Virus record (IMG/VR): IMGVR_UViG_3300009430_000004
Location: 154,089-218,088 of that record
Length of the DNA stretch: 64,000 nt
Reading direction: 5' to 3' (one strand)
The position numbers and the translations under genes are program-made. Of the stretch, positions 20,109 to 45,342 are shown piece by piece; the stretch's first letter is position 1, and the number at the start of each line of letters is the position of its first letter. The notes beneath the pieces were generated by a model that worked only from the letters and a program-made list of their open reading frames with translations, searched no databases and was not told the DNA's origin.

Positions 20109-20130
20109 ATAATTATATTATTAGGAGGTA
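20109..20130 (+). repeat. 22-bp shared leader, copy 1
   Basis: ATAATTATATTATTAGGAGGTA, identical at 34853 and 45321. Confidence 0.9.
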
Positions 20131-20137
20131 AACAATC

Positions 20138-20617
20138 ATGGCTAAAGGAAAAAGAAAATTCGTTGAGAAAATCGCTCGTATTAAGGAGCTTCAGAAAGAG
20201 GCTGAAAAGGAAAGAAGAAAGGCGATAATTGAGTGTGCTCACCAAAATGAAAAAGGCAAGCTCAAGATTCACCCAGTTAACGAAAAGGGTGATTATGAAT
20301 GTAAATACTGTGAAGAGCAGTTCAACATGAACTCCATCAGCAGAAGTAACATTGAGGACGCAATCGAAACAATGCACAATGCTATTCAGCAAATCAGATG
20401 TTTCTCTGATCCTGAGGACGATGCTAAGCTTGTAAGATTACTTGGCGAACTTGACTTCAACATGCAGGAAGTTGGCGAGCTCTATGAGAGAATCGTTAAC
20501 CTATACGGCAAGAACAAGAAGAAGAACAGGGGTGACAAGTACAAAGATCATGATAGCTTCGGTAGCTACGGTGCATCCTCATTAAGCTTCATTGGTGGCG
20601 GAAAGAAAAATAAATAG
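20138..20617 (+). CDS. Putative Zn-ribbon protein with basic termini
   Basis: CAH...CKYC motif; carries the 22-bp shared leader. Confidence 0.6.
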   Translation: MAKGKRKFVEKIARIKELQKEAEKERRKAIIECAHQNEKGKLKIHPVNEKGDYECKYCEEQFNMNSISRSNIEDAIETMHNAIQQIRCFSDPEDDAKLVRLLGELDFNMQEVGELYERIVNLYGKNKKKNRGDKYKDHDSFGSYGASSLSFIGGGKKNK

Positions 20618-20648
20618 TAGAAAGCTGCATCAGTCTTTTTAGGTAGCG

Positions 20649-20689
20649 GATGTGTAAGATGGAGTACTCCATCTTACACATTCATTTTT
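20649..20689 (+). terminator. Intrinsic terminator
   Basis: ATGTGTAAGATGGAG / CTCCATCTTACACAT plus T-tract. Confidence 0.75.
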
Positions 20690-20766
20690 GTCTGTTTTAC
20701 AGACAATTATTTTTTGTATCAAAAGAAATTCCAATACGTAAGGGCGTAATAAATTACAAACTAACA

Positions 20767-20778
20767 AACATTATATTG
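20767..20778 (+). promoter_or_regulatory. Late-type promoter (topoisomerase B)
   Basis: AACA TTATAT TG. Confidence 0.55.
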
Positions 20779-20804
20779 GAGTATATTTAAGAAGGGGTGA
20801 TATA

Positions 20805-23231
20805 ATGGAAAAGTTTGTAGATGATGTTATAGAGCATAAAGAGGATGACATCGAGAAAATACAGACTAAACCCAATATGTATATCAGCTACTCAGGTAGA
20901 AGGGGTTCTAAACAGTTAGCTTATGAAAACATCAATAATGGTATTGATGAATGCATTAACCCTAATTCACCTGGAGATGAGATTGATATTGTAATTGATG
21001 AGACTGAAAACTCAATAAGTGTAACCGATAATGGTAGAGGAATTCAGTTTGAAAAGATGGAACTTGTCTGTACAAAGTTACAGGCTGGAAGTAAATTTAC
21101 TAGAGAGGGAAGCGGTGGTTCTGCTGGTGAAAACGGTGTAGGTATGACCGCTATGAATGCTCTCTCAGACTGGTTTGAAATCATTTCATATAGATATGGT
21201 GAAAGAGCCAAGGTAAGATTTGAGTTAGGAAAGCTAGTTCAACCTCTTACTGTAAAGAAAGTATCTGGGGATAAACATGGAACAACGGTCGCATTTAGAC
21301 CATCATCTATGTTCCTAGGAGAAGATTGTGCTATAGACTCTGATGAGTTATTGGCATGGACTGAAAAAATTATTTGTTTAGTACCACCTGAAATAAAGGT
21401 AAACTTTAATGTGATTAAGAAAGGAAAAGAATCAACAATCCAAAAGAAATTTAGAAATAAAAATGGTCTTTACGACTATTGCAAGAAGTTGGCTAAAAAG
21501 CCGCTTATAGACCCAATTCATTTTATGAGAACAATGAAAATGATGGAGAGAGTGAATACAATAACACCATCTAATTTAGATGATGCTATGAAATCACCAA
21601 ACTCGACATTTAAAGACGTAGAACGCTTTATTGGGCTAGAAGTGGCATTTACGTTCAATTCTGGTAGTGTAGACATGGTTGCTGATTCATTCTGTAATTT
21701 TATTAACACAGTAGAGAATGGTGTGCATGTAGATGCAGTTAAAACAGGTATATTACAATACCTAACTAAACAGACAAAAGATATGATGTCTGAGAAGGAA
21801 GCTAAGAATATTGATATAACCTTTGGTGATGCAGCTCAAGGTTTAGTATTAACAGTATACTTGAGCACTAATATGCAACCTCAGTTTGCATCTCAGACTA
21901 AAGAGAAGTTAACAAATAACGATTTCTTCAAACCTCTAAGAGATATGTCTTATAGAGCTTTGGATGAATATTTTAAGAAGAATACAAAAGAGCTGAAGAA
22001 GCTTACTGATATGATAAAGACTAATGCTAAGGCTAGAATAGAAGCCAACAAGGTTAGAAACTCAGTCATTAAAGGTGAGACAACTTCACTCGATGAGCAT
22101 AAATTAAAGAACTTTGCTCCTGCAAATAATAAGGGTAGAAATGAGTATAGAGAGTTATTCTTGATAGAAGGAGACTCAGCAATGGGCTCTGCTAGACAAG
22201 GAAGATTCGATAATGACACTCAAGCACTATTTGCCCTTAAGGGAGTCCCCCTAAACTCATTTAGCTTAAAGCTTGACAAAGTATTATTAAATGATGAGTT
22301 TAGAGGATTAACAAAAGTCTTAGGTTGTAACATAGGAGAAAGATTTGACATAACTAAGTTGAAGTATAAGAAGATTATCATCATGACTGACGCAGATATT
22401 GACGGTAATAGAATTACATCACTTATTTGTGCATTCTTCTTAGTGCATATGCCTGAGATAGTAAAACAAGGTTATCTGTATAAAGCAGTTACGCCTTTAT
22501 ATAAAATAAAGGATAATAAGAAACCTTTCATACTCAATAAACAAGAGTACATTGAAGTCTTTGAGGAAAGAGTTAGAAAGAACATCAGACTTATTAATCC
22601 TGAAACAAAGGTTGTATTCAAGGAAAAAGATATGAAGGAATTCTTGTTAAATAACAGAGAATACCTTGAAGAATTAGATAGAGTAGCAAATCATTTCGCA
22701 GTACATCCTATGATAGTTGAATTCTTAGCTATACATATGGATGATAGCGACTTCCTCAAAAAGCTTAGAAAGAAATTCCCTGAATTGAAAGTTGATGAAG
22801 ACAATGTATTGTCAGGTATATATGAAGGTAGATATCAGAATATAATACTTGATAAGATATTCAATAAAAGAGTCAACACTTTGAAGACTCTTATTAGAGA
22901 AGTCAATCAGAATAAAGCTTATTACATTCTTCATGAAGTTAGAGGTAAGGAGTTCGAAGATAGAGGGTTAATGTCAATCGGTGAGTTGTTAACATTATGT
23001 GAAAAGTTCCAACCTGAGATAGAAATGAGGTATAAGGGACTTGGTGAGTTAGACCCAGCTAAACTAAGAGAAACAACTCTTGACCCGAATAATAGAATAC
23101 TTATCAAACTTACTCTTGAAGACTTGGAAGCAGAGTTAACTAAGTTTAGAATATTACACGGAGATGACTCTGAAGAAAGAAAGAAGCTTATGGCACACTT
23201 CAAAATCAATAGGGAAGATCTTGATAACTAA
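20805..23231 (+). CDS. gyrB: Type IIA topoisomerase ATPase/TOPRIM subunit (GyrB/ParE)
   Basis: ENINNGIDE, DNGRGI, EGDSA, IMTDADIDG, RYKGLGE motifs. Confidence 0.93.
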   Translation: MEKFVDDVIEHKEDDIEKIQTKPNMYISYSGRRGSKQLAYENINNGIDECINPNSPGDEIDIVIDETENSISVTDNGRGIQFEKMELVCTKLQAGSKFTREGSGGSAGENGVGMTAMNALSDWFEIISYRYGERAKVRFELGKLVQPLTVKKVSGDKHGTTVAFRPSSMFLGEDCAIDSDELLAWTEKIICLVPPEIKVNFNVIKKGKESTIQKKFRNKNGLYDYCKKLAKKPLIDPIHFMRTMKMMERVNTITPSNLDDAMKSPNSTFKDVERFIGLEVAFTFNSGSVDMVADSFCNFINTVENGVHVDAVKTGILQYLTKQTKDMMSEKEAKNIDITFGDAAQGLVLTVYLSTNMQPQFASQTKEKLTNNDFFKPLRDMSYRALDEYFKKNTKELKKLTDMIKTNAKARIEANKVRNSVIKGETTSLDEHKLKNFAPANNKGRNEYRELFLIEGDSAMGSARQGRFDNDTQALFALKGVPLNSFSLKLDKVLLNDEFRGLTKVLGCNIGERFDITKLKYKKIIIMTDADIDGNRITSLICAFFLVHMPEIVKQGYLYKAVTPLYKIKDNKKPFILNKQEYIEVFEERVRKNIRLINPETKVVFKEKDMKEFLLNNREYLEELDRVANHFAVHPMIVEFLAIHMDDSDFLKKLRKKFPELKVDEDNVLSGIYEGRYQNIILDKIFNKRVNTLKTLIREVNQNKAYYILHEVRGKEFEDRGLMSIGELLTLCEKFQPEIEMRYKGLGELDPAKLRETTLDPNNRILIKLTLEDLEAELTKFRILHGDDSEERKKLMAHFKINREDLDN

Positions 23232-23232
23232 T

Positions 23233-23260
23233 GGGCTAGAAATCTAGCCCTATTTTTTTA
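23233..23260 (+). terminator. Terminator between topoisomerase genes
   Basis: GGGCTAGA / TCTAGCCC plus T-tract. Confidence 0.7.
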
Positions 23261-23263
23261 AAA

Positions 23264-23273
23264 TATATATTAT
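23264..23273 (+). promoter_or_regulatory. Early motif (topoisomerase A)
   Basis: TATATATTAT. Confidence 0.6.
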
Positions 23274-23299
23274 TGATATAGCAATGATGAGGGAGGTAA

Positions 23300-26975: not shown

Positions 26976-27015
26976 GATATACGGCTAAAAACCGTATATC
27001 TTATCTTATTTTTTT
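26968..27015. terminator. Bidirectional terminator
   Basis: AAGATAAGATATACGG / CCGTATATCTTATCTT. Confidence 0.75.
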
Positions 27016-28180
27016 ATGCTTCTTCCTTTTCATAAAGGACATTAAATACTTCCCTTATATCCATCTTACCATCAAACATATCCTCATTGAACTTTCTTAA
27101 CCAAGCTGAAAGCATTTGTTGCTTCTCATATGTTGGGTCATTGAGGTAGTTTTCATAGTAACCTTTATAAGCTGCAAGGTTATCCTTTAATTCTTCCTTC
27201 AAATCCTTCGGAAGGTTTGGATCATCCAAATCCCTTTCGAGTTTGTTAATCATATTCTTCATTCTTGTCTGATTCTTAGGATGTACACCTATGAATGTAG
27301 ACATGATATTCTGCATAATTCCAGCTATGTCATCAATAACATTAAGAACTGGAACATTTCTAACTATTCTGTTGTACATTTTATTTGGGTCATTCTGCAA
27401 CTTATCTAACGCTGTTGCAAGTGGCTGTGCATACCCATATGATGCAGCAAAGCTATCAGAGAATCTCTCCATACCATATCTAAATAGGTTTGATATGTCG
27501 AAATTAACAACCTGTTGAGCCATAGCAAGTGGGCTACCAAGTAATGGTCCAGAAATGTGATAAAGAAGTCTATTAAGCCCAGCACCTATATTATAGAATA
27601 CTGATAGATACTTCTTAAAGAACCTTTCAACACCCATTCTGATTTCAGTTATTAACTGTACAACCCAATGCTGAACAGCCCAGCCTATAGGACTGTATAA
27701 CAGAGTTGGTATTGTGCATAGGAAGTAAAATGGAGATGTGTCAAAATTGTGTCCTATCTCATGAAGTATGATAGCCATCATTTCTTTCTCATTCAATTTA
27801 GTCTGAGAAATAAGTGCTGTGTCAAGGAACACATAGATTTTCAATCTCTCATTGATAAATTTACCTGATTCTTCCCTTTTCTCGATGTTCTTAAGATACA
27901 TCATAGGGAAAGATGATATTGGTGTGCAGGCATTAGGTACTGAATCTTGCCAGTGAATTTTAATATACTTAACTCCAAAGAAATCAGCAAGAATCTTCTG
28001 TAATTTCTGGTTAGGTTCTGATTTATCTATATCAGTCATCGCCCTGAAAATACTCTTATCGTTATCCTTTCTGATTATCTCTGCAATTTTAGCAAGTTCT
28101 GCCTCCGCTGCTTCGAATTGTTTAGGCTTACCTAGATAAGCTTCCATAACAGGGTTATTTTTTCTTGAAAAAATAGCCAC
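27014..28180 (-). CDS. Zincin-like metallopeptidase, putative virion protein
   Basis: IILHEIGH and downstream E.FSDSFAASYG motif; late promoter. Confidence 0.7.
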   Translation of the reverse strand: MAIFSRKNNPVMEAYLGKPKQFEAAEAELAKIAEIIRKDNDKSIFRAMTDIDKSEPNQKLQKILADFFGVKYIKIHWQDSVPNACTPISSFPMMYLKNIEKREESGKFINERLKIYVFLDTALISQTKLNEKEMMAIILHEIGHNFDTSPFYFLCTIPTLLYSPIGWAVQHWVVQLITEIRMGVERFFKKYLSVFYNIGAGLNRLLYHISGPLLGSPLAMAQQVVNFDISNLFRYGMERFSDSFAASYGYAQPLATALDKLQNDPNKMYNRIVRNVPVLNVIDDIAGIMQNIMSTFIGVHPKNQTRMKNMINKLERDLDDPNLPKDLKEELKDNLAAYKGYYENYLNDPTYEKQQMLSAWLRKFNEDMFDGKMDIREVFNVLYEKEEA

Positions 28181-29638: not shown

Positions 29639-29680
29639 AAAAAAATAAGGAAGATGATTAATTTCATCTTCCTTATTTTT
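29639..29680 (-). terminator. AATAAGG-family terminator
   Basis: AAAAATAAGGAAGATGA / TCATCTTCCTTATTTTT. Confidence 0.75.
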
Positions 29681-30212
29681 CTAACTCATTTATTAACTTA
29701 TTCATTATAACAGTATTACTTATATATCGTAATACAGTTGGATCATTACTTAATGCCTGCCTGCATATATCTTCAGTTTGAATCTTGCAGAATTGTAATG
29801 CTCTAGGAGTTTTCTTAACAGCTTCCATGCATATTTCTTCAGTCTGTTCTTTTACAAATTGTAATGCAGTACCATTCTGCCTAACAGCTTCTATACACAG
29901 CTCATGAGTTTGGTTATCCTTTATCATATTAAGTATCCTACCATTACGCTTAACAGCTTCAAGCTTCATTTCATATGTAGGATTCATTATAAACTGATAT
30001 GACAAAGGATTGTTTCTAATAGCCATTAGACATAATTCCTCAGTTTGGCTTTTAACATATTCCAAGGCATCACCATTCTGTGTAATGGCTACACGACATG
30101 CTTCCTCAGTTTGTGGACTAAAATACCTCAATAACAATCCGTCACGCCTTAAATCGTCAATAATAACAGATGGTAAATGATAGTGGTTTCCTCTCATAGC
30201 AAATTCTCCCAT
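29673..30212 (-). CDS. DUF4116-like repeat protein
   Basis: Five ~24-aa repeats of EE(L/I)C.EAV..NG.AL.(Y/F)VK.QT. Confidence 0.75.
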   Translation of the reverse strand: MGEFAMRGNHYHLPSVIIDDLRRDGLLLRYFSPQTEEACRVAITQNGDALEYVKSQTEELCLMAIRNNPLSYQFIMNPTYEMKLEAVKRNGRILNMIKDNQTHELCIEAVRQNGTALQFVKEQTEEICMEAVKKTPRALQFCKIQTEDICRQALSNDPTVLRYISNTVIMNKLINELEK

Positions 30213-30250
30213 AGATTTTATACCTCCTAATTATATTAGTATCTATATTA

Positions 30251-31374: not shown

Positions 31375-32094
31375 ATGGCTATAACAAAACAAACTAGAAA
31401 ACAAATGGAAGCCTTAATATATTCCGTTTTCGATGCTCTCGACCCTTCCAAAACAAATAGTAATAAATACAAGGATTTCTTCGGGGAAATGTCGGATTCA
31501 CAGTTCGATTCATTTTTTAGAAATTTCTTTAAGGATGAAAATCAGTATTTAACTCTTGATGTTGTGGATTATGAGAGAGATTTTAAGATTGAAAATGTTG
31601 AGCAAGCAGCTAAGATACTTGGGGTTCCATTATTTGAGAAAGTAGTTATGCCATTTGTTAATAAAAATACAGATAAACCAGTCATTACTAAATATGAAGT
31701 ACCTGTGGGATATGTGCATGTTAAGAGGGTTCAGCAGATGCTCAGTAAGAAGAACACTACTTCTACTGAAATAGCTTCCCGTTCAGCATTAACAGGACAG
31801 GTTGTTGGAAAGGATAAGAATGCAAGAGACTCTGATGCTGAAAACTTCGCATTAGTTACGCTTAATGCTAATGAGACATTAAGAGAGTTTATGGGTCCAA
31901 GAGCTGACGACTTAGTAATGAAGAATGAAATGTACGCTTCAATAGCACAAAAGGGATATGTTTCCCTAGACCAATTAACTAACCATGTTGAAAATAAGAC
32001 TACTTTAAATGCCCTCGATGTACATCTAATAGGTATGGGTATTAAGTCAGACCTTGTTACTCAAGGATTATTGGTTAAGAAATCACTAAAATAA
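31375..32094 (+). CDS. RNA polymerase beta C-terminal fragment, probably virion RNAP
   Basis: VPVGYVHVKRVQQ, RS.LTGQ, R.SDAENFAL, LREFMGPRADD match the beta clamp region; only a late promoter upstream. Confidence 0.75.
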   Translation: MAITKQTRKQMEALIYSVFDALDPSKTNSNKYKDFFGEMSDSQFDSFFRNFFKDENQYLTLDVVDYERDFKIENVEQAAKILGVPLFEKVVMPFVNKNTDKPVITKYEVPVGYVHVKRVQQMLSKKNTTSTEIASRSALTGQVVGKDKNARDSDAENFALVTLNANETLREFMGPRADDLVMKNEMYASIAQKGYVSLDQLTNHVENKTTLNALDVHLIGMGIKSDLVTQGLLVKKSLK

Positions 32095-33064: not shown

Positions 33065-33150
33065 GATTTAATTCCTCCCACAGAATCAAAATATTTTTCA
33101 CTAGCATCTATATTTACTAGCGGAACATACAAATATATTATCTACGTATG

Positions 33151-33695: not shown

Positions 33696-34826
33696 ATGTT
33701 AAAAGTTTGCGTAATCGGTATAGGTAATGCTGGAAACCAAATAGCTGAGTTGGCTAAAAAGGAAAGAAACATTCCTGGGATTGCACTCAATTCAAGCGAG
33801 AAAGATATATCAACACTATGTCACGTAGATAAGTTTATCGTAGGTGACGAAAAGGGTGCTGGTAAAGATCGTAATATCGCCAAAGAGTTTATGAGACAGA
33901 ATATTCAAACACTACTGAAACAAGATTTGTTTAAGAAGATGGTTGAAGAGAATGAGGTTGTGTTTATCGTAAGTTCTACAGGCGGCGGAACAGGAAGCGG
34001 AATGGCTCCCGTATTAACAGATATACTCACAAGGGTGTATCCAATGAAAAAATTCCTGTTAACATTCATACTGCCACCATTAAGAGAAAGCGTAGCTGCA
34101 CAACAAAATACAATTGAGTATCTTAAAGAGATGAGAAAGTTTAATCCAACTTATCTTCCATATGACAACAACAAGCTTGCTGGAAGACCAACAAGTGTTA
34201 TGATGGAAGAAGTTAATAAAGAAGTTGTTGAAGACTTTTGTATCATCCGTGGAGATTATCAGTTCGCTACTCAATATAACAGCATAGATGAAAAAGACAT
34301 GCTGAAGCTTATTGAGACGCCAGGAAGATTGAGCTTTGCTAAGGTCTATAATATCAGAGAGAAAGACCTTGATGACAAATCAATCGAAGACCATTTAATA
34401 AATAATATCACAAACACATCAGTAATGTGTGAATTGGAAAGAGATAGAATCATTAAGAGACTTGGCATAATTACTAATCTTAACGAGAAGATGCACAAGT
34501 TACTAGATACTAATCTTCCAACTTTAAAAGAACTTATTGGCGAACCTGTAGAAGGGTTTGAACATATCTATGTTAATAAGGCAGATGATGAACCAAATAG
34601 AGTTATTGCAATTCTTTCAGGTTTGTCTGTTCCTGATGACAGAATTGAAAAAGTTCTGCAACGAATTGAGGATGCAGAAGAACAGCTTATGAAGACCAAG
34701 GATTCATCAATACTTGATGATGCTAAAACTGACTTGATAGATGAGTTGAGAGACACATCTGGAAGTAAGGTTGGTGCTCAAGAAGTTGACCTTGGAGATA
34801 TCTTCGACAGCTATATGAAGAAGTAA
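33696..34826 (+). CDS. Tubulin/FtsZ-family GTPase (PhuZ/TubZ-like)
   Basis: VIGIGNAGNQI, GAGKD, STGGGTGSG signature, T7-loop-like SIDEKD. Confidence 0.9.
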   Translation: MLKVCVIGIGNAGNQIAELAKKERNIPGIALNSSEKDISTLCHVDKFIVGDEKGAGKDRNIAKEFMRQNIQTLLKQDLFKKMVEENEVVFIVSSTGGGTGSGMAPVLTDILTRVYPMKKFLLTFILPPLRESVAAQQNTIEYLKEMRKFNPTYLPYDNNKLAGRPTSVMMEEVNKEVVEDFCIIRGDYQFATQYNSIDEKDMLKLIETPGRLSFAKVYNIREKDLDDKSIEDHLINNITNTSVMCELERDRIIKRLGIITNLNEKMHKLLDTNLPTLKELIGEPVEGFEHIYVNKADDEPNRVIAILSGLSVPDDRIEKVLQRIEDAEEQLMKTKDSSILDDAKTDLIDELRDTSGSKVGAQEVDLGDIFDSYMKK

Positions 34827-34843
34827 TAAAATAATTTATCAAT

Positions 34844-34874
34844 AACAAAAAAATAATTATATTATTAGGAGGTA
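34844..34874 (+). promoter_or_regulatory. Late promoter fused to 22-bp shared leader, copy 2
   Basis: AACA AAAAAA TA then ATTATATTATTAGGAGGTA. Confidence 0.75.
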
Positions 34875-34881
34875 ACCTATT

Positions 34882-35745
34882 ATGAGTATTAAAGAATTTG
34901 TGAGAGACTGGAAACCAAAGAAAATGAGTAAAGATGACAGGACATACATGCTGTATGATAACATTCCTGCCATGGTAAGCTTCTATATTAAGAGGGGACA
35001 TGCTGACCAGGATACAGTAAATAAGCTGTTTGACAAAATGGAAGATCCAAAGTTCCCTAAGACATTACTTAGAATTTTAAAGACACAGGATGAAACTCCT
35101 GTTGAGCTTGGAATGGCTGTTGTTATTGCTGACTTCTTAGAAAGAAGGCATGCCAAAGTTGATGAAGAAACTCTTGGAATGTATGATGAATCTGTAACAA
35201 AGATTCTTAAGCCAAGAATGAAAAAGCTCAGCAAGAAGCTTGGTCTTGAAAAGGATATCCTTAAGGAGCTGCTGGTTGTAGTGCCTGATACTGATGTTAT
35301 GTCAGACAAGAAGTTCATCGGCATTTATGTAATGAAGATGCTTAGAAGACTTTATATCCTTGCAAAGGATACTGACCTTGGTCTGGAAGATGTTAAAACT
35401 GTTAAGAAGCTTTTCAAAGCTCTATTCGGCGATGACCAGATTGATAATATAGCTATCAATGTACTTCTTGAAAGAAAAGAAGGAATGAAGAATTTCGGCG
35501 ATAGACAACTTGCTGTTTGGAATCTTATGACTTCTTTCGCTCTTGAGACTTTAGAAGATCACAAGAAGAAAGAAATCAAAGAAATGCTTGAGCATTATAT
35601 CGGCAGAAGAGCTAAAGATGCTGAAAAAGGTAGGGACTTCGCTAGAAGAGTGCAGTTAAGCCAGGTTGCAGAGGATAATTATCCAAAGCTTGCTGCTGCT
35701 GTAGAAGACCTTTGCGAAAAGGACAAGAATAAGAAGTTCCTGTAA
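34882..35745 (+). CDS. Charged all-alpha protein of unknown function
   Basis: 287 aa; 22-bp shared leader; late promoter. Confidence 0.65.
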   Translation: MSIKEFVRDWKPKKMSKDDRTYMLYDNIPAMVSFYIKRGHADQDTVNKLFDKMEDPKFPKTLLRILKTQDETPVELGMAVVIADFLERRHAKVDEETLGMYDESVTKILKPRMKKLSKKLGLEKDILKELLVVVPDTDVMSDKKFIGIYVMKMLRRLYILAKDTDLGLEDVKTVKKLFKALFGDDQIDNIAINVLLERKEGMKNFGDRQLAVWNLMTSFALETLEDHKKKEIKEMLEHYIGRRAKDAEKGRDFARRVQLSQVAEDNYPKLAAAVEDLCEKDKNKKFL

Positions 35746-35760
35746 AACAGAGATGAAATA

Positions 35761-35795
35761 GAAGAGGGTATAATTACTCTCTTCTTTTTCTTTTC
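35761..35795 (+). terminator. Intrinsic terminator
   Basis: GAAGAGGGTA / TACTCTCTTC plus T-tract. Confidence 0.65.
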
Positions 35796-38183: not shown

Positions 38184-40496
38184 ATGAAAGGAGACAGGCA
38201 AATGTCAAATGTTCAACCGAAACCACAATTAAGAAAAGAAAAAGACTATATTAATACGACAACGATAAGGTTGAAAGAGACCTTATGTGAAAAAGAGGAA
38301 AAGTACCATTTTAAAGATGATATATTCGGTATGACATTACTAACGAACCCTGGATATATAAGTGCTTCAAGAAATATAATGTTTACATCACATTTGAGGC
38401 AGTTCGTTAACCTGTTGAACCCTGAGTTTCCAAAGGTGTTTACCAACTATGAAAATATAGTTGGTAAATACTCAACTGGATATTATAGGGCGAAAACAGA
38501 TTTAAAGGTAGTTGATAAAATAGCTAAGTTCGGCAACGGAGTATTGGACAATCATCTATATCTTCTATTCACATATGATGAAGAGAATGATAAATATGAT
38601 GTTATTCAGAAACGTATAGTTGAAGACTTAACAGAAAAGTTCGGGTTCCCTTACAATAATGAAGTAATGGATGCTAAGGAACCAGGAGATGAAGTAAGAG
38701 CAGGAGAGGTGTTATACAAGACACCGTCATATGATGAGGACATGAATTACTGTTATGGTAAGAATGTCAAGTTCATGTATCTGCTAGATAATGACACCAT
38801 AGAGGACGCAATAAAGTGTTCTAAGTCATTTGCAAAGTCTATGAAATCTAAGGAAGTAGAAACTGTTAAAGTGTCCCTAAATGATAACGATATATTCTGT
38901 AATTATTATGGGACAAACGAAGAGTACAAGTGCTTCCCAGATATTAATGAGTTTATAAAGGATAAGATAGTTTGTGTTAAACGAAGAATACACAACAATC
39001 AGCTTTTATATGATGTAAAGAAATCAAATCTAAGAAAAATCAATTTTATGTCAGACAGCCTATCATTCTGTGAAGGTAGAATTGTAGACATAAATATCTA
39101 TTCAAATAAACCAATAGAAGAGATAGAAGACAATAGCTTTAATAGGCAATTATTAAAATATATTAAAATGCAGAGAGAATTCTACATCAAGGTTTATGAG
39201 AGATGTAAAAAGATAATAGACTCTGGCTCAAAGTATTCCAGTGAAGTTAACTTCTACTATAAGAAAGCTAAGAACATTCTCGATGAAAAGTATAAATGGA
39301 AAGAAGAAGATAATTCAGTATTCAGTAATATGATTATTGAATTCTTAATCGAGAGAGATGTTGAACTTTCAGTGGGACAGAAGATTACAGGACGATATGG
39401 AAATAAGGGAGTAGTATCTGAAATACTTCCAGACGAGGAAATGCCGTTCTTGGAAACTGGGGAAAGAGTTGATATCATATTCAATACTCTCGGCGTTATA
39501 AACAGAACAAATTCATTCCAGTTAATGGAGCAGTCAATTAACTTTATTTGTAACAGAGTAAGGGAAAGACTGAAGATTATGAATGATTTGAAAGAGAAGG
39601 AAAAATTATTATTTAAGATAATTAATTACTTCAATGACAAGCAGGCTGATAGTCTGCATGATTACTATAAGAGATTGGCTAAAGTCGACAAAGAAGATTT
39701 CTTTGAAGATATTATAGAAAGAGGAATATTTGTTCATATCCCGCCACTATGGGAAGACAGGAGTCTATTCGATAGACTTAACGACATTTATAAAGAATTC
39801 ACATGGATTAAACCATATGATGTTTATGTCAATAGGTTTGGTAGAAAGATAAAGATGTTGAAACAGTTAATAGTCGGGGATATGTACGTTATAAAATTAA
39901 AACAAACATCAAAGAAAGGTTTCTCGGTAAGAGCAACAGGTTCTCTTAGTAAGAGAGGCGTTCCAGAGAAATCTAATAAGGCTAAAAATCATCAGGAGCT
40001 TTATTCAAGAACACCTATAAGAATAGGTATTGATGAAAATCTCAATACTGCAATTGGTGTTGAAACCGAAGAAATAGCTAAGATCCACTTATTCTATAGG
40101 TCATCAGTTATAGGAAGACGAGACCTAGGAGAAAGATTAACAACAAATATTAAGGAAGTAAAGGAATTTAAATATTCACCAGAGTTTAAGAATAGAAATG
40201 TTGAGATTCTTCAAGCTTATCTTAAAGCAATGGGTCTGAAAATAGACTTTGAAGAGGATAAGTATTTCATAGATATATTCCTAGGTAGTATGGAGGAATA
40301 TAATTATGGGGATAAAACCTTTATATGCACTAGGAGAGAGTTTGAAGATAGAAAAACTAGGATGGACGTTGAAACTGACTTCCGAGAAAAGAACTATTTC
40401 GTTGGCTCTAAGGCTGAATATGAGGAAGCTGTCGATAAAAGAGTCAATGATGTCAATTTAAGAAAGTCTAAGTATGTAATAGATGTAAAAATGTAA
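38184..40496 (+). CDS. RNA polymerase beta C-terminal half, probably non-virion RNAP
   Basis: TIEDAI, GQKITGRYGNKGVVS..LPDEEMP, VDIIFNTLGVINR, VGDMYVIKLK motifs; early motif upstream. Confidence 0.9.
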   Translation: MKGDRQMSNVQPKPQLRKEKDYINTTTIRLKETLCEKEEKYHFKDDIFGMTLLTNPGYISASRNIMFTSHLRQFVNLLNPEFPKVFTNYENIVGKYSTGYYRAKTDLKVVDKIAKFGNGVLDNHLYLLFTYDEENDKYDVIQKRIVEDLTEKFGFPYNNEVMDAKEPGDEVRAGEVLYKTPSYDEDMNYCYGKNVKFMYLLDNDTIEDAIKCSKSFAKSMKSKEVETVKVSLNDNDIFCNYYGTNEEYKCFPDINEFIKDKIVCVKRRIHNNQLLYDVKKSNLRKINFMSDSLSFCEGRIVDINIYSNKPIEEIEDNSFNRQLLKYIKMQREFYIKVYERCKKIIDSGSKYSSEVNFYYKKAKNILDEKYKWKEEDNSVFSNMIIEFLIERDVELSVGQKITGRYGNKGVVSEILPDEEMPFLETGERVDIIFNTLGVINRTNSFQLMEQSINFICNRVRERLKIMNDLKEKEKLLFKIINYFNDKQADSLHDYYKRLAKVDKEDFFEDIIERGIFVHIPPLWEDRSLFDRLNDIYKEFTWIKPYDVYVNRFGRKIKMLKQLIVGDMYVIKLKQTSKKGFSVRATGSLSKRGVPEKSNKAKNHQELYSRTPIRIGIDENLNTAIGVETEEIAKIHLFYRSSVIGRRDLGERLTTNIKEVKEFKYSPEFKNRNVEILQAYLKAMGLKIDFEEDKYFIDIFLGSMEEYNYGDKTFICTRREFEDRKTRMDVETDFREKNYFVGSKAEYEEAVDKRVNDVNLRKSKYVIDVKM

Positions 40497-40587: not shown

Positions 40588-40636
40588 TATTGTAGATATA
40601 CATAAGATATGGGATTATGTGTATTGAATATATTCT

Positions 40637-41209
40637 ATGGGAGGAATAGAAATGAAAAGTATAGTAAACTTAATAGTATTAATTATTATCTGCGTGGTAG
40701 GAGTTGAGGTGGCAAATAAAATCGTTAGCTGTTTTAACAACGGTGAGGAGGTAAAGGTTGTAGCTATAATAACTACAATAGTTGTTGTGGCAATCATTGT
40801 TCTAGCAAAAGAATTTTTATGTGTTGGAACCGAACCTGGTATAAATGAGGAAGATGAGGACGATGACTCAAAAGGAGGTCGAGTAATTAACCTAACTCAT
40901 TACAGAAGGGAAGATGGTGAATACGCTCAAATCACACCTGTTAAGGTGATAGATAATGTCAATAAGTTTGATAATGATGAGGATTTGTATGTTCCTGCAT
41001 TATCTAGGGTTGAAAAGGAGAACTTAATACATTATGAAAGGATTGATACGGAGTCAATCAAACAAGAAGTTCTCAGGATGATTTCAACTGGCAACAGAAG
41101 AATTGAAATGGAAGTTGTCGAAAGATTAAACAGACTTGCACAAGTAGAGGACACTTCAGAGTTTATGGAAGAGAATCCTCAAGTATTAAAATTCATATTT
41201 AGTTATTAA
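40637..41209 (+). CDS. Membrane protein with two N-terminal TM segments
   Basis: Two hydrophobic stretches then acidic domain; CGTA-class promoter; true start likely ATG 40652. Confidence 0.6.
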   Translation: MGGIEMKSIVNLIVLIIICVVGVEVANKIVSCFNNGEEVKVVAIITTIVVVAIIVLAKEFLCVGTEPGINEEDEDDDSKGGRVINLTHYRREDGEYAQITPVKVIDNVNKFDNDEDLYVPALSRVEKENLIHYERIDTESIKQEVLRMISTGNRRIEMEVVERLNRLAQVEDTSEFMEENPQVLKFIFSY

Positions 41210-41229: not shown

Positions 41230-42360
41230 ATGAATAAGAAAGTAAACCAAATCAGACCAACAAGAGTTATAGAGGTAGTTGAGCTAATCGAGAAAATCCG
41301 TGCAGAACATCCAACAGCAACATTGAGAAATGTATTCCAGTTGCTTAAATCAGGTAAGGCATATTCCAGATTGAATGATTATGAAAAGAAGAAAATTTGG
41401 GACGAGCCAGATATCACCGCTGCCTTACAAGTGTTTGTCAATAACTCCAATGAAGATGATAAACAACTTTTTGAAAAATCTTCAGATATGAATGAAACTG
41501 TTGACAGGATCATTGGAGACATAATGGCTGGTAAGACTTATAATTCTTCTGAAGGAGATAACGAAGAGTTGGAAACTGACAAAAATAAAGGAGAAGACGA
41601 AAACATGGAAAATTATATTAAGAAAACTGGCGAAGACACAACTCCAAAAAATATTGAAGAATACTTTAAAAGTGAAAGTGGGGAAGAAGCTATGAAAACC
41701 GAGCAAACTGGAACTAAAGGTGAAGAAAATAAATCTGAAAAGACATCACCTAAGAAATATAACGGCAAAGCCTTCATATTCAAATATAAGAAAGCAGTTG
41801 ACCTAAATGAGACTATAGAAGTCTCAATCGGAGACAAAGATGGGAACAAAGAAAGCAACAAAGATGAAAATTGGAAAACAATTGAAGGTGTTGAATACGA
41901 AACTAAAGACGGGGCTGAAGCTGGTGAAAAGAAATCTGGGATAGTAGTTGAGTTTGTTAAGAAACTTAAGATGCTACAAGAAAAGGAATCAGAATCTTTT
42001 ACAAAGCTTGTTAATATAATCAAAGAAAAGAAGAGCCTTGATCTGGATGATCTTATAGAAGAAATGGATATGAGATTATTCGGTTTGATTGGTGTAATCA
42101 TGGCGTTTGCTAGTAAGTCCAATGTTGAAAAGCATCAAATAGCACAGTACATAGTATGTACTGCTGAAGGGCTATATGATTATGCAGTTTATGAATCTGA
42201 TGTTACAGGTACTGATATAGTAGTTTCGGGTAATGTTATTCCTTTCAAGAAGAAGGAAGAAATAGTTACTAAAAAGACGGAAGACTATAGCCATATACAT
42301 TTTCCAAGTGTAAAAACTAAACTTGAAGGGATGGCTAAGAGAAGAGCATTATTCGGTTAA
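41230..42360 (+). CDS. Hypothetical protein with acidic low-complexity centre
   Basis: 376 aa, GAAAGGGTGGG RBS. Confidence 0.65.
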   Translation: MNKKVNQIRPTRVIEVVELIEKIRAEHPTATLRNVFQLLKSGKAYSRLNDYEKKKIWDEPDITAALQVFVNNSNEDDKQLFEKSSDMNETVDRIIGDIMAGKTYNSSEGDNEELETDKNKGEDENMENYIKKTGEDTTPKNIEEYFKSESGEEAMKTEQTGTKGEENKSEKTSPKKYNGKAFIFKYKKAVDLNETIEVSIGDKDGNKESNKDENWKTIEGVEYETKDGAEAGEKKSGIVVEFVKKLKMLQEKESESFTKLVNIIKEKKSLDLDDLIEEMDMRLFGLIGVIMAFASKSNVEKHQIAQYIVCTAEGLYDYAVYESDVTGTDIVVSGNVIPFKKKEEIVTKKTEDYSHIHFPSVKTKLEGMAKRRALFG

Positions 42361-42367
42361 TTTATAA

Positions 42368-42406
42368 AATAAAAATAAGGGCAAATCTTCATGCCCTTAT
42401 TTTTTT
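42368..42406 (+). terminator. AATAAGG-family terminator
   Basis: AAAAATAAGGGCA / TGCCCTTATTTTT. Confidence 0.75.
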
Positions 42407-42426
42407 CCTTTAATTCGTATTATACT

Positions 42427-42448
42427 TATATATTATAACAAAGTAATA
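42427..42448 (+). promoter_or_regulatory. Overlapping early and late promoters
   Basis: TATATATTAT AACAAA GTA and AACA AAGTAA TA. Confidence 0.65.
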
Positions 42449-42474
42449 ATAAATCGAAAGGTGGTAATTTTATC

Positions 42475-43113
42475 ATGAAGAGAACAAAAATATTTATGGG
42501 CTTAGAGTTCACAGGATTAAGAAAGGACACTAGCCTTGTGTCTATAGGATTAGTTTCAGAAGATGGTAGAGAATTCTACGCTGAAGCTACAGATTATGAA
42601 CCGATACTTGTTGACCAATGGTTAAAGGATAACGTTATAAGCAAGTTAAAATACCAAGGTGTTCAAGCATCACCATTGAATGGAGAAGGGGAAATTGTCG
42701 TTCAAGAGGAGCCTGTGGTAAACGAAGAAAATCTTCCGTTCCACATATACATGTGCGACAAATCTTCGGTGATTGCTCAAAGTCTCAGAGAATGGTTTGC
42801 ACAGTTTGATTTTGTTGAAATATGGTGCGATGTTTATGCGTATGACTGGGTTGTATTCTGCGACTTGTTTGGTACTACAGCATTTGATATTCCAGCAAAT
42901 ATATACTACATTCCATTTGACCTTGCTACTGCAATGAGGATGTGTTCAGTAAACCCAGATTTGAACAGAGAAGGTTATGTTGCTATCCCTGAAGTGAACA
43001 GAGCTACTAATCAGCATAATGCATTATGGGATGCAAAGATTCAATTGCTTACATTAGCAAGACTTCAAAAGAAATATGACTTCGCAGATAGAGCATTAAA
43101 ATTTGATTTCTAA
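42475..43113 (+). CDS. DEDDh 3'-5' exonuclease-like protein (Rv2179c-like), first Asp replaced
   Basis: G-L-EFTGL, SIGLV, YDW, HNALWDA motifs. Confidence 0.75.
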   Translation: MKRTKIFMGLEFTGLRKDTSLVSIGLVSEDGREFYAEATDYEPILVDQWLKDNVISKLKYQGVQASPLNGEGEIVVQEEPVVNEENLPFHIYMCDKSSVIAQSLREWFAQFDFVEIWCDVYAYDWVVFCDLFGTTAFDIPANIYYIPFDLATAMRMCSVNPDLNREGYVAIPEVNRATNQHNALWDAKIQLLTLARLQKKYDFADRALKFDF

Positions 43114-43142
43114 ATCAGGAAGGGTCAATCCCTTCCTGATTT
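43113..43142 (+). terminator. Intrinsic terminator
   Basis: AATCAGGAAGGG / CCCTTCCTGATT. Confidence 0.7.
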
Positions 43143-43172
43143 ATATATTATTCTCTTGTAAACATAACAATG
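43142..43172 (+). promoter_or_regulatory. Early and late promoters (ligase)
   Basis: TATATATTAT TCTCTT GTA; AACA TAACAA TG. Confidence 0.65.
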
Positions 43173-43184
43173 GAGGTGAGGTAA

Positions 43185-45269
43185 ATGATGGATAAAGACA
43201 TGCTAATTGGAGCATTGTCCACGATATATCTAACTATTGAAGAGAAAGATGATTATGCTAAAGCAATAGAAATGTTAAATGCCATGAAAATAAATAGTTT
43301 AGTTAATTATTATATTAACGTGGCTGAAGAGTATGATGAACAAGATTCTGTTATCATACAACAAATCATATGGATACTCCAAGCAATATATAATAATAGT
43401 GGGGAGATATCTCCTGTGACGGATGAAGATTATGATAAGATATATGAAATAAATAGGACATTTACTGGTGAAGAAATAGTAGGTTCCTTTAATGCTTCAG
43501 ATAGAAATATATCTAATCATAAGTATCCTGATTTAAGAGGAACCTTAGATAAGGTTCATTTTATTACCCTCGAAGATAAGGGTAAAGATAAAAGAAAGTC
43601 AATCCCAGAATGGAGAAAAGCAGTAGAAAATAAACTGGGGCGACCTTTAACCGATGATGAATGTCAAATGTATGCATTTCCTAAATTTGATGGTTTATCT
43701 GAAATATTTGAGTGTGATAATACTGGATTAGTCGAGAAAGTATTGTCGAGGGGAGATACAGATAAGAACGAAGCTGTTGATACCACTAAATTATTTAAGG
43801 GAACTAAATTCAGTATGATTGAAGGATGGAATTCACCTTATGGAATAAAGACAGAGGTTGTAATGTCAGAAGATAATTATAATGAACTCTGTTCTAAGGA
43901 AGGTGACTTTAAGAGTCCAAGAAGTGCAGTATCGTCCATATTGAATTCAAAGGAACTTGATAGGAAGTATCTAAAATATCTGACTGTAGTTCCATTACAG
44001 ATTCAGAATTATGATACTAAGCAAATAATAGTGGCACCATCAATGTTTCAACAATATCCATGGAGTCTAATAAATCTTAATGATGAAGACCATATGAGAG
44101 AAACCTTTAATGGTATAAAGAAAAAGATGGAAACAGAATATGGTGTACCTATAGACGGTATAGTTTTAAGATTTAAGAATACAAATCTTCATACTGTGTT
44201 AGGACGAGATGGTGCAATTAATAAATATGAGGTTGCATTTAAGTTTCCACCAGAGCAGAAGAAAACCATATTAAAGGATATAGACTTCTCAGTAGGTATC
44301 CTTGGAGGGGTTACCCCTGTTGCTAAAATAGAACCTGTTAAAATTAAAGGTAATACAATCAAAAGTATTAGCTTAGGTTCTATTGATAGATTTGAAAGCT
44401 TTGAATTCAGAGTTGGAGATGAGGTAATTGTAAAATATGATATTATACCTTATCTGACAAAAGATGAAACATGTAAACCTGGGATTGGAAAGAAATTTGA
44501 AACTCCTAAAGAATGTCCATTTTGTCATGAGGAGTTAAAGAAAGACCCTGTGTTAAAATGTGTTAATCTAAATTGTGAATCTAGAGCTATAGGTAAGATT
44601 CTTAATTATGTAGAAAAGATGAGAATCGCTAATATATCTATTGGTATAATAACAACCCTATTCAAGGCAGGTTATTTAAAGTCTATCGAAGACTTATATA
44701 AACTGGAAAAACATAAGAGGTCTATTGTTATGATGGACGGATTCGGTGAAACATCTTTCAATAAGATTATTGCAGGTGTAGATTCGAGAAGAGATGTATA
44801 TGACTATGAATTTATGGGGTCATTAGGTATCCCAGATATCGGTCGCAAAATGTTTAAAAAGATTTCAAATATATATTATCTAGATGAGTTAATACAGATA
44901 TGTATTAATGACAAGGCTGAAAAGCTTACTGCGATAGGAGGTATAAAGAAGAAGACAGCTAATAAAATTATAGAAGGTGTAAACCTTAATAAAGATTTAA
45001 TTACATTTCTACGTTCCGAGTTAAAAATTAGGAGGGATGAACGAAGATATACAATCAAAGTGTACTTCACAAAAGTGAGGGATAAAGAATTTGCAAAGTA
45101 TCTTGAAAGTAAAGATGTCTTAATAATGGAAAGCTATAACAATGAAGTTGATTTGTTAATCATTCCAGACAGAAATACTGAATCAAGTAAAATAACTAAG
45201 GCTCAAAAAGCTAATAAGGAAATCGTCACAATTGACGAGGCTTATAAGATGTTCGGTTATAACCAGTAA
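43185..45269 (+). CDS. ligA: NAD-dependent DNA ligase
   Basis: KFDG adenylation motif, DGIV, AFKFP, OB fold, CPFC..C...C Zn finger, BRCT tail. Confidence 0.92.
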   Translation: MMDKDMLIGALSTIYLTIEEKDDYAKAIEMLNAMKINSLVNYYINVAEEYDEQDSVIIQQIIWILQAIYNNSGEISPVTDEDYDKIYEINRTFTGEEIVGSFNASDRNISNHKYPDLRGTLDKVHFITLEDKGKDKRKSIPEWRKAVENKLGRPLTDDECQMYAFPKFDGLSEIFECDNTGLVEKVLSRGDTDKNEAVDTTKLFKGTKFSMIEGWNSPYGIKTEVVMSEDNYNELCSKEGDFKSPRSAVSSILNSKELDRKYLKYLTVVPLQIQNYDTKQIIVAPSMFQQYPWSLINLNDEDHMRETFNGIKKKMETEYGVPIDGIVLRFKNTNLHTVLGRDGAINKYEVAFKFPPEQKKTILKDIDFSVGILGGVTPVAKIEPVKIKGNTIKSISLGSIDRFESFEFRVGDEVIVKYDIIPYLTKDETCKPGIGKKFETPKECPFCHEELKKDPVLKCVNLNCESRAIGKILNYVEKMRIANISIGIITTLFKAGYLKSIEDLYKLEKHKRSIVMMDGFGETSFNKIIAGVDSRRDVYDYEFMGSLGIPDIGRKMFKKISNIYYLDELIQICINDKAEKLTAIGGIKKKTANKIIEGVNLNKDLITFLRSELKIRRDERRYTIKVYFTKVRDKEFAKYLESKDVLIMESYNNEVDLLIIPDRNTESSKITKAQKANKEIVTIDEAYKMFGYNQ

Positions 45270-45292
45270 TAATAAAAAATTATTCACTGGAT

Positions 45293-45342
45293 AACATATC
45301 AATGAAGGCAAAAATAAATTATAATTATATTATTAGGAGGTA
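45293..45342 (+). promoter_or_regulatory. Late promoter plus 22-bp shared leader, copy 3
   Basis: AACA TATCAA TG; leader 45321-45342. Confidence 0.75.

What the first reader, a model, noticed from the sequence alone, without database searches (positions are those of the whole stretch)
20109..45342. Identical 22-bp leader ATAATTATATTATTAGGAGGTA on three unlinked genes
Seen: perfect copies at 20109, 34853 and 45321 precede the Zn-ribbon protein, the 287-aa protein after tubulin, and the HU-like protein. Two copies are fused to A(A/T)CA-AAAAAA-TA promoters so that the transcript starts inside the repeat. By eye the three genes favour AAG/CTT/TTC/AAC codons, unlike their neighbours. Inference: a translational operator or enhancer co-regulating abundant DNA-organising proteins, like T4 RegA/gp32 operators.
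Basis: partly seen in the sequence, partly recalled or inferred. Interest (0 to 1): 0.65.

Follow-up and report, generated by a model that had tools for sequence, protein, structure and literature searches.

The report
Shared leader of abundant phage genes
Four unrelated, heavily expressed genes of an uncultured giant phage related to Bacillus phage AR9 carry one identical 22-base promoter-end-plus-ribosome-binding leader, and the same genes in several sister phages share other, lineage-specific leaders, which points to coordinated high-level translation rather than a conserved T4-style operator.

Summary
The 22-mer occurs perfectly at window 20109, 34853 and 45321, against 0 expected by chance. 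A fourth perfect copy lies outside the window at genome position 57464.

The genome is a 218-kb AR9/PBS1-like jumbo phage from groundwater. It uses AR9-type early (TATATATTAT-N6-G) and late (AACA-N6-TA/G) promoters. In three copies the late promoter abuts the repeat, so the predicted transcript starts at base 3. In the fourth copy a conserved late promoter lies 17 nt upstream of the 22-mer, so the repeat is entirely 5' UTR. The shared unit is therefore a short A/U-only 5' UTR plus an AGGAGGU Shine-Dalgarno sequence.

All four genes are compact promoter-leader-ORF-terminator units. On codon bias they rank 7th to 15th of 183 genes, beside the tail sheath and major head genes.

The 22-mer itself is not conserved in relatives. 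However, orthologues of these genes in several sister genomes share their own lineage-specific translation-initiation sequences (permutation counts 0, 1, 57 and 377 of 20,000 in four genomes; three others not significant).

My preferred reading is a high-expression leader cassette homogenised by recombination and kept by selection. A dedicated translational operator remains possible. No RegA or gp32 homologue is present. Only the 117-aa protein is HU-like, by fold only, and it is acidic.

The parts
20109..20130 (+). 22-mer copy 1. Predicted +1 at 20111; SD AGGAGG at 20123-20128; ATG at 20138.
20100..20111 (+). AR9-type late-promoter-like site ATCA-A6-TA, a one-base variant of AACA, fused to copy 1.
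   Evidence: PWM 8.2 bits; rule taken from PMC5312081
20065..20082 (+). AR9-type early-promoter motif TTATATATTAT-N6-G upstream of copy 1. With the late site this forms a tandem early + late arrangement.
20138..20617 (+). 159-aa basic protein (P0001). C33/H35/C55/C58 are invariant in 7 orthologues. Codon-bias rank 15 of 183.
20648..20683 (+). Terminator-like hairpin (16 pairs) plus T-run after P0001.
34844..34855 (+). Late promoter AACA-A6-TA fused to copy 2. Predicted +1 at 34855.
   Evidence: PWM 16.9 bits, mid-range
34853..34874 (+). 22-mer copy 2. SD at 34867-34872; ATG at 34882. No terminator lies between the tubulin stop and this site.
34882..35745 (+). 287-aa all-helical basic protein (P0002). 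It follows tubulin in most relatives examined. Codon-bias rank 10 of 183.
35760..35785 (+). Terminator-like hairpin after P0002.
45293..45304 (+). Late promoter AACA-TATCAA-TG. Predicted +1 is G at 45304. Its position is conserved in one relative, L053.
45321..45342 (+). 22-mer copy 3. It lies wholly inside the predicted 46-nt 5' UTR (45304-45349). SD at 45335-45340; ATG at 45350.
45350..45703 (+). 117-aa acidic protein (P0003) with an HU/IHF-like predicted fold. Highly conserved (48-74% identity to P0003 across 29 aligned sequences). Codon-bias rank 11 of 183.
45714..45741 (+). Hairpin (12 pairs) after P0003, with a weak T tail.
30221..30242 (-). Degenerate copy with 3 mismatches before a DUF4116 gene (29673-30212, -). 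It is driven by an early-type promoter and the gene has low codon bias. Probably not part of the set.

Best explanation
The 22-mer is the shared 5' end of the mRNA of a small class of very highly expressed non-structural genes. It comprises the last two bases of an AR9-type late (non-virion RNA polymerase) promoter, a 12-nt A/U-only unstructured stretch, and the Shine-Dalgarno sequence AGGAGGU placed 7-9 nt before the AUG.

Each gene is a compact unit: an early promoter (own or read-through), a late promoter, the leader, the ORF and a terminator. Each gene is therefore probably made throughout infection and in large amounts.

The leader works in cis as a strong, open ribosome-loading site. It may also stabilise the 5' end. 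No dedicated trans factor is needed.

Its perfect identity in four places reflects copying of the cassette between these genes by the phage's own recombination system, retained by selection for maximal and matched output. The same process has homogenised the initiation regions of the orthologous genes, with other sequences, in sister lineages.

Shown: the anatomy, promoter motif usage, codon bias, terminators, and the lineage-specific co-variation. Inferred: the transcription start sites, expression level, enhancer effect, and the recombination origin.
For: Phage type and promoter use:
- The nearest cultured relatives are AR9/PBS1, at 37% identity in the RNAP beta subunit.
- A homologue of the AR9 promoter-specificity subunit gp226 is present (E 1.5e-21).
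- AACA-N6-T[AG] occurs 63 times in sense and 5 times in antisense upstream of genes. TATATATTAT occurs 25 versus 2 times.
- The distance from predicted +1 to the ATG is typically 25-32 nt for late genes, and 25-27 nt for the two AACA-type copies scored.

The repeat acts as transcribed leader:
- At 45321 the promoter sits 17 nt upstream of the 22-mer, and its position is conserved in one relative. Perfect identity there begins 2 nt before the point where the RNA starts in the other three copies.

High expression:
- Codon-usage ranks are 7, 10, 11 and 15 of 183, next to the tail sheath, major head protein and RNR.
- Orthologues rank in the top ~10% in 4 further genomes.
- Terminator-like hairpins follow each of the three window genes.
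- Predicted structure around the start is weak for three of the four genes: ranks 17, 24 and 28 of 220.

Homogenisation rather than ancient conservation:
- The 22-mer is absent from relatives.
- Tract lengths differ between pairs: 33, 30 and 22 nt.
- G004 shows nested, overlapping tracts.
- UvsX and SbcC-like recombination genes are present.
- A second identical-leader family sits on 7 non-homologous early-type genes.
Against: - Other top-expressed genes, such as the sheath and head genes, do not use this leader. It is therefore not simply the best ribosome-binding site for every abundant gene.
- The late-promoter PWM scores of the copies are only mid-range.
- Conversion between 30-bp patches without flanking homology is not a demonstrated process in this phage.
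- Recurrence of leader sharing in the same gene set in several lineages is also what a dedicated regulon would produce.
- No expression data exist. The only run holding this DNA is a groundwater DNA metagenome.
Confidence: 0.5

Rival explanations
1. The leader is a dedicated post-transcriptional operator. A phage-encoded protein binds it, or a nuclease cuts it, and so co-regulates this gene set. The factor could be one of the set's own basic proteins acting autogenously, or an SD-context-specific endoribonuclease in the manner of T4 RegB. Factor and site co-evolve, which makes the site lineage-specific.
For: - The shared sequences are confined to the set. In G004, AGGAGGAAACTAAA occurs 4 times in 234 kb: at orthologues of three of the four genes plus the orthologue of G000 89654-90205. 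In G006, GGAGGACAAAA occurs 3 times, all at orthologues of the set.
- Permutation against random strong-SD gene sets gives 0/20000, 1/20000, 57/20000 and 377/20000 in four genomes.
- 11 of the 21 ortholog-group pairs that share a leader substring of at least 11 nt in two or more genomes fall within six genes.
- Structural genes with equal codon bias use another Shine-Dalgarno flavour.
- AR9 itself shows no such families.
- The G006 sequence fits the T4 RegB site consensus GGAGRAYARAA given in PMC3014915.
Against: - No RegA or gp32 family member is present.
- The position of the shared block moves between lineages: upstream of the SD in the window's genome, and SD plus spacer in G004 and G006. 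This is unusual for one conserved binding protein.
- Three of seven genomes show no significant sharing.
- The window's own 22-mer does not fit the RegB consensus.
- No complementary (antisense) copy exists within 2 mismatches in the window's genome or G004, or within 1 mismatch for the shorter G006 motif.
- No binding data exist.
Confidence: 0.27
2. The identity is a neutral by-product of recent ectopic recombination between A/T-rich initiation regions. The 22-mer is an ordinary ribosome-binding site with no special property.
For: - The 22-mer is not conserved in any relative.
- Tract end points vary.
- A second leader family sits on unrelated early genes, so such copying is frequent in this genome.
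Against: - The same orthologous genes are affected in independent lineages.
- All of them lie at the extreme of codon bias in five genomes. Neutral copying should hit genes at random.
- At 45321 the transcribed part is perfect while the adjoining promoter-like part has diverged.
Confidence: 0.13
3. The repeat acts on DNA. Its TATATTAT core followed by N6-G mimics the early (virion RNA polymerase) promoter. The site would then be a second, overlapping promoter or a decoy or roadblock for that polymerase.
For: The core TATATTAT and a G exactly 6 nt downstream are present in all four copies.
Against: - The early-promoter PWM scores are 7.7-11.1 bits, against 14-25 bits for nearly all true sites in leave-one-out scoring.
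- The two bases before the core (AT) depart from TA, which is present in about 90-95% of the other early sites once the four leader copies are set aside.
- A start at that G would give an mRNA without a Shine-Dalgarno sequence.
- AR9's virion polymerase is reported to be intolerant of single deviations (PMC5312081).
- The shared leaders in G004 and G006 have no such core.
Confidence: 0.04

Closest known systems
AR9/PBS1 late promoters and 'continuously expressed' genes (Lavysh et al. 2017, PMC5312081)
   Same: The two promoter motifs match: TATATATTAT-N6-G and AACA-N6-TA/G, with the last base as the start site. Early and late promoters are arranged in tandem before replication-type genes. A gp226 homologue is present.
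   Different: AR9 shows no family of identical leaders. The longest shared initiation-region substrings between gene pairs are 17-19 nt. The four proteins have no detectable AR9 homologues.
T4 RegA regulon and gp32 autogenous operator (reviewed in PMC3014915)
   Same: Both involve A/U-rich, unstructured sequences at initiation regions shared by several unrelated mRNAs for replication-type proteins.
   Different: RegA sites include the AUG and are only loosely similar to each other. The gp32 operator has a pseudoknot. Here the copies are exact, stop before the AUG, and no RegA or gp32 homologue is encoded.
PeSL promoter-stem-loop cassettes of T4-type phages (PMC2839356, PMC4122927)
   Same: Short, near-identical regulatory cassettes are repeated at the 5' ends of unrelated genes and are thought to spread and act through recombination.
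   Different: PeSLs are early promoter plus terminator hairpin modules flanking variable ORFan genes. Here there is no hairpin, the promoter is the late type, and the genes are conserved and syntenic. The window genome's second leader family, on early-type genes, is closer to the PeSL picture.
Phage translational enhancer leaders and 5' stabilisers (T7 gene 10 leader; the Bacillus STAB-SD element). These are recalled from my own knowledge and were not checked here.
   Same: Both have a short A/U-rich leader with a strong Shine-Dalgarno sequence near the 5' end, associated with very high expression.
   Different: The known examples are single-gene leaders. Here one sequence is copied on four genes and co-varies across lineages. 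The effect has not been measured.

Membership tests
AR9-type late (nvRNAP) promoter | AACA at -11 to -8 and T(-1) A/G(+1) | tested here: met
   Exact at 34844-34855, at 45293-45304, and at the fourth copy in the genome. The 20100-20111 site has ATCA, one deviation.
AR9-type late (nvRNAP) promoter | The motif is used genome-wide, oriented upstream of genes | tested here: met
   63 sense versus 5 antisense in the window's genome, with similar ratios in five relatives.
AR9-type late (nvRNAP) promoter | Presence of the promoter-specificity subunit (AR9 gp226) and split beta/beta' subunits | tested here: met
   gp226 homologue at genome 37427-38911, E 1.5e-21. RNAP beta piece at window 38184-40496.
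AR9-type late (nvRNAP) promoter | Mapped transcription start; deoxyuridine-containing template | not testable with these tools
   No RNA runs hold this DNA. Base modification cannot be read from the sequence.
AR9-type early (vRNAP) promoter | Full consensus A/T-rich TATATATTAT-N6-G | tested here: not met
   The leader scores 7.7-11.1 bits, against 14-25 bits for nearly all true sites. It has AT instead of TA before the core.
T4 RegA translational regulon | A RegA-family repressor is encoded | tested here: not met
   PF01818 has no match at E<=1 in the complete genome.
T4 RegA translational regulon | Operator overlaps the AUG, is A/U-rich and is unstructured | tested here: inconclusive
   The leader is A/U-rich and unstructured, but the shared block ends 5-7 nt before the AUG.
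T4 gp32 autogenous operator | gp32-family SSB and a 5' pseudoknot | tested here: not met
   PF08804 is absent. The leader has no G/C outside the SD and no fold. No Rfam family matches.
HU/IHF (Bac_DNA_binding), for the 117-aa protein | Sequence membership | tested here: not met
   No Pfam or PHROG hit. The profile search against PDB puts IHF beta at the top, but only at E 1.4.
HU/IHF (Bac_DNA_binding), for the 117-aa protein | Two helices plus a beta-sheet with an arm (the fold) | tested here: inconclusive
   Model pLDDT is 88. HU/Hbb/IHF chains fill the top of both searches, but weakly: Foldseek E 0.055, probability 0.94; VIA Z 6.7, 5.3 and 5.1.
HU/IHF (Bac_DNA_binding), for the 117-aa protein | Basic DNA-wrapping arms | tested here: not met
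   pI is 4.6. The arm region is rich in D/E, and the C-terminal tail is acidic.
PeSL cassettes of T4-type phages | Early promoter plus stem-loop, flanking variable genes | tested here: not met
   The cassette has no hairpin, the promoter is the late type, and the genes are conserved and syntenic.

The most novel reading that the evidence does not exclude
An uncultured clade of AR9-like jumbo phages has a post-transcriptional regulon of at least six abundant, mostly basic, non-structural proteins. These are the Zn-site protein, the tubulin-adjacent helical protein, the acidic HU-fold protein, a 197-aa protein, a 183-aa protein and a 266-aa protein. Their translation-initiation regions act as a lineage-specific 'address' read by a fast co-evolving phage factor (a protein, a nuclease or a small RNA). 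Temporal or quantitative control would then be exerted at the ribosome-binding step, not only by the two phage RNA polymerases.
Probability: 0.25. Interest if true: 0.75.

Novelty: new variant of a known kind. Interest (0 to 1): 0.5.

Why it matters
Gene control in jumbo phages with two multisubunit RNA polymerases is currently described in terms of promoters only. This finding has four consequences.

1. It provides a sequence-defined, testable candidate for a translation-level layer of control.
2. It picks out a short list of conserved proteins of unknown function that are predicted to be as abundant as the capsid protein. One of them is the gene directly after the phage tubulin.
3. If the leader proves to be a strong enhancer, it is a compact expression part of about 33 bp (promoter, UTR and SD) for AR9-type polymerase systems in Firmicutes.
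4. If it proves to be an operator, it would be a regulon whose recognition sequence changes between sister lineages, which is unusual.

Tried and rejected
- **Chance.** Rejected: 0 expected by shuffles.
- **Paralogy of the four genes.** Rejected. The proteins differ in length, N-termini and predicted folds, and they belong to separate ortholog families.
- **Conservation of the 22-mer in relatives.** An exact 18-mer scan of IMG/VR found only a near-identical 104-kb contig plus unrelated chance hits. Orthologue upstream regions in about ten relatives lack it.
- **Early-promoter function.** Rejected on PWM scores.
- **Known RNA family or tRNA.** None found.
- **Antisense or complementary copy elsewhere in the genome.** None within 2 mismatches (1 for the shorter G006 motif).
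- **Homologues in cultured phages.** tblastn of the 287-aa and 117-aa proteins found none. Profiles searched against the AR9 and Listeria phage LPJP1 genomes found none. AR9 transcriptome and proteome data therefore cannot be transferred.
- **Function of the 287-aa protein.** The model is confident (pLDDT 92), but only generic helical-repeat noise appears in PDB, and the only significant BFVD matches (3 at E <= 0.001) are uncharacterised gut myovirus proteins.
- **Function of the 197-aa protein.** The Atlas search was uninformative.
- **Expression evidence.** The only run holding the DNA is a groundwater DNA metagenome, probably the source sample.
- **RegA and gp32 families.** Absent.
- **Searching ENA/Logan contigs through the genome search.** Not possible.
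- **Not used, because not needed for the claim:** the big representative protein search and complex prediction.
Full report
**1. Observation**

The 22-mer ATAATTATATTATTAGGAGGTA occurs perfectly at window 20109, 34853 and 45321, all on the + strand. One 3-mismatch copy lies at 30221 (-). None is expected in dinucleotide-preserving shuffles.

The window is bases 154089-218088 of a 218,088-bp IMG/VR virus record with terminal repeats and 33.5% G+C. The whole genome holds a fourth perfect copy at 57464.

Each copy ends 5-7 nt before an ATG:
- a 159-aa protein at 20138;
- a 287-aa protein at 34882, directly after a tubulin gene (Pfam Tubulin, 2.7e-20);
- a 117-aa protein at 45350;
- a 197-aa protein at genome 57491.

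Three copies are identical over 30-33 nt, because A[A/T]CAAAAAA lies directly upstream of them.

**2. What kind of genome this is**

The surrounding genes encode topoisomerase II subunits, a Dda-like helicase, UvsX, a split RNA polymerase beta subunit, NAD ligase, a DNA polymerase and SbcC.

The closest cultured phages are Bacillus phages AR9/PBS1, at 37% identity in RNAP beta. A homologue of AR9 gp226, annotated in the AR9 record as a non-virion RNAP subunit and, to my knowledge, its promoter-specificity subunit, is present here and in all relatives examined.

AR9 uses two promoter types: the early promoter AAATATATATTAT-N6-G(+1) and the late promoter AACA-N6-T-A/G(+1). Its 'continuously expressed' genes carry both (PMC5312081).

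The same two motifs dominate this genome. TATATATTAT-N6-G and AACA-N6-TA appear upstream of many genes. Both are strongly strand-specific:
- late motif: 63 sense versus 5 antisense;
- early motif: 25 sense versus 2 antisense.

Five relatives give similar ratios. The only sequencing run holding this DNA is a groundwater metagenome, and no RNA run holds it.

**3. Anatomy of the repeat**

By the AR9 rule, AACA-A6-T-A at 34844-34855 and at the fourth copy, and the one-base variant ATCA-A6-T-A at 20100-20111, place +1 on the third base of the 22-mer. The RNA would then begin AAUUAUAUUAUUAGGAGGUA, with the SD 7-9 nt before the AUG and a total 5' UTR of 25-27 nt. That length is typical of late genes in this phage.

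The copy at 45321 has no promoter in register. Instead, AACA-TATCAA-T-G lies at 45293-45304. One relative has a late promoter at the same position (AACA-TATTTT-T-G). At this site the 22-mer is therefore entirely 5' UTR.

Perfect identity at this copy begins two bases before the point where transcription starts in the other three. The upstream part resembles a decayed copy of the CAAAAAA tract. I read this, by inference, as the conserved unit being the transcribed leader rather than the promoter.

Early-type promoters lie upstream of copy 1 (20065-20082) and of the fourth copy. The tubulin and ligase genes, which precede copies 2 and 3 without an intervening terminator, also have early-type promoters. 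Terminator-like hairpins follow the three window genes at 20648, 35760 and 45714. By eye, one also follows the fourth gene.

Each gene is therefore a compact unit of promoter, leader, ORF and terminator, probably expressed both early and late.

**4. Is the TATATTAT core an early promoter?**

A position weight matrix built from 37 early sites scores the four copies at 7.7-11.1 bits. True sites score 14-25 bits in leave-one-out scoring. The two bases before the core differ from the TA that nearly all the other early sites have. A start there would also remove the SD from the mRNA. I reject this reading.

The late-promoter scores of the copies are mid-range (13.0 and 16.9 bits). By sequence, the promoter is not exceptional.

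**5. Are the genes abundant?**

On the first axis of codon usage, the four genes rank 7, 10, 11 and 15 of 183. That end of the axis is occupied by the tail sheath, major head protein, other virion proteins and ribonucleotide reductase.

- TTC, AAG and CTT are enriched in all four genes.
- AAC is enriched in two.

Orthologues of the four lie in the top ~10% (all but one in the top 15), together with the head protein, in four more genomes. In a fifth genome the main axis does not track the head gene and is uninformative.

Predicted structure around the start codon is weak for three of the four genes: ranks 17, 24 and 28 of 220.

**6. Relatives**

An exact 18-mer scan of IMG/VR finds the leader only in a near-identical 104-kb contig. 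Protein searches give 26, 30 and 7 family members (query included), all unnamed or carrying only generic or automatic labels, from metagenomes.

Synteny (tubulin, 287-aa gene, UvsX, RNAP beta, ligase, 117-aa gene) holds in relatives at about 60% identity.

None of the orthologues carries the 22-mer. Late promoters of the AACA-N6-TA type do precede most of the orthologues.

**7. Lineage-specific co-variation**

Within other genomes, the same genes share other sequences.

| Genome | Shared sequence | Occurrences | Where |
|---|---|---|---|
| G004 (234 kb) | AGGAGGAAACTAAA | 4 | Orthologues of three of the four genes, plus the orthologue of genome gene 89654-90205 |
| G006 (264 kb) | GGAGGACAAAA | 3 | All at orthologues of the set |
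| G001 | a 15-mer | 2 | Both at orthologues of the set |

I summed the longest common substrings among the orthologues' -40..+3 regions and compared the sum with 20,000 random sets of strong-SD genes. Random sets reached the observed value in:
- 0 cases in the window's genome;
- 1 case in G004;
- 57 cases in G006;
- 377 cases in G001.

G002, G003 and G005 were not significant.

Across genomes, 21 ortholog-group pairs share a substring of at least 11 nt in two or more genomes. Eleven of these pairs fall within six genes: the four, plus a 183-aa basic protein and a 266-aa protein. Partial similarity is also seen in three further metagenomic relatives.

AR9 itself has no such families.

**8. Leaders track expression class**

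The window's genome has three Shine-Dalgarno flavours that track expression class.

| SD flavour | Genes | Promoter association | Notes |
|---|---|---|---|
| RAAAGGn(n)TGA | 11 | 8 with late promoters, 0 with early | Includes several very large ORFs; one matches a virion structural family |
| TRTGGGAGGA, inside an identical 21-26-nt leader | 7 | 0 with late, 4 with early | Non-homologous genes with low codon bias |
| TAGGAGGTA | 9 | 3 with late promoters, 4 with early | The present set and a few other codon-biased genes |

**9. The proteins**

None of the four proteins matches Pfam above its curated cut-offs, or any PHROG family.

| Protein | Properties |
|---|---|
| 117 aa | Model pLDDT 88. 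HU, Hbb and IHF chains dominate both fold searches, but weakly (Foldseek E 0.055; VIA Z 6.7 to 5.1). pI 4.6, with an acidic arm and tail. |
| 159 aa | Basic. Invariant CxH...CxxC. |
| 287 aa | Confident all-helical model. No informative match. |
| 197 aa | Uninformative. |

'DNA-organising' therefore remains a guess.

**10. Interpretation**

I favour (0.5) a high-expression leader cassette. The promoter end, an open A/U tract and a strong SD near the 5' end were copied among a class of abundant continuous-class genes by recombination. The cassette is kept because it maximises and equalises output.

The main rival (0.27) is a dedicated operator read by a co-evolving factor.
- For it: the gene-set restriction and the recurrence across lineages.
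- Against it: the shared block shifts position between lineages, RegA and gp32 homologues are absent, and no complementary RNA is found.

I give a purely neutral recombination by-product 0.13 and a DNA-level early-promoter mimic 0.04.

Noticed in passing
window 33065-33090 (-) and 40625-40651 (+); also genome 24634, 48315, 51929, 90748 and 107921: A second identical leader, TTCTGTGGGAGGAATTAAAT(C)ATG (21-26 nt), precedes seven non-homologous genes with low codon bias. Four of them have early-type promoters. This resembles the PeSL-style cassettes of T4-type phages.
   Followed up: partly
genome 52382-54358, outside the window (L046:12382-14358): The phage encodes a 658-aa protein with dCache_1 and MCPsignal domains, that is, a methyl-accepting chemotaxis-type receptor. 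This is an unusual gene for a phage.
   Followed up: no
genome 89654-90205 (-) and 32718-33518 (+), outside the window: Two further conserved genes have leaders that co-vary with the four in sister genomes. One encodes a 183-aa basic protein. The other encodes a 266-aa protein with an acidic-hydrophobic C-terminal tip reminiscent of SSB tails. In this genome their leaders are degenerate versions of the 22-mer.
   Followed up: partly
window 3648-7433 (-), 27014-28180 (-), 31375-32094 (+), and elsewhere in the genome: Eight of the eleven genes with the distinct SD flavour RAAAGGn(n)TGA have a late promoter and none has an early one. Leader type therefore tracks temporal class.
   Followed up: partly
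locus G006:C1, around 167621, 184692 and 194514: The leader shared by three orthologues in relative G006, GGAGGACAAAA, fits the T4 RegB cleavage-site consensus GGAGRAYARAA exactly. This may be coincidence.
   Followed up: no
window 33696-35745; loci L052-L055: The tubulin gene and the 287-aa gene are adjacent in most relatives. In one relative (L052) the tubulin position is taken by a 556-aa DUF8224 protein.
   Followed up: no
window 29673-30242 (-): A DUF4116-repeat protein gene carries a 3-mismatch version of the leader behind an early-type promoter. Its codon bias is low.
   Followed up: partly
genome 56495-58512, outside the window: The fourth leader gene sits between an endolysin (glucosaminidase + SH3) and a PC4-like DNA-binding protein. 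The endolysin neighbour is conserved in one relative examined (L152).
   Followed up: no
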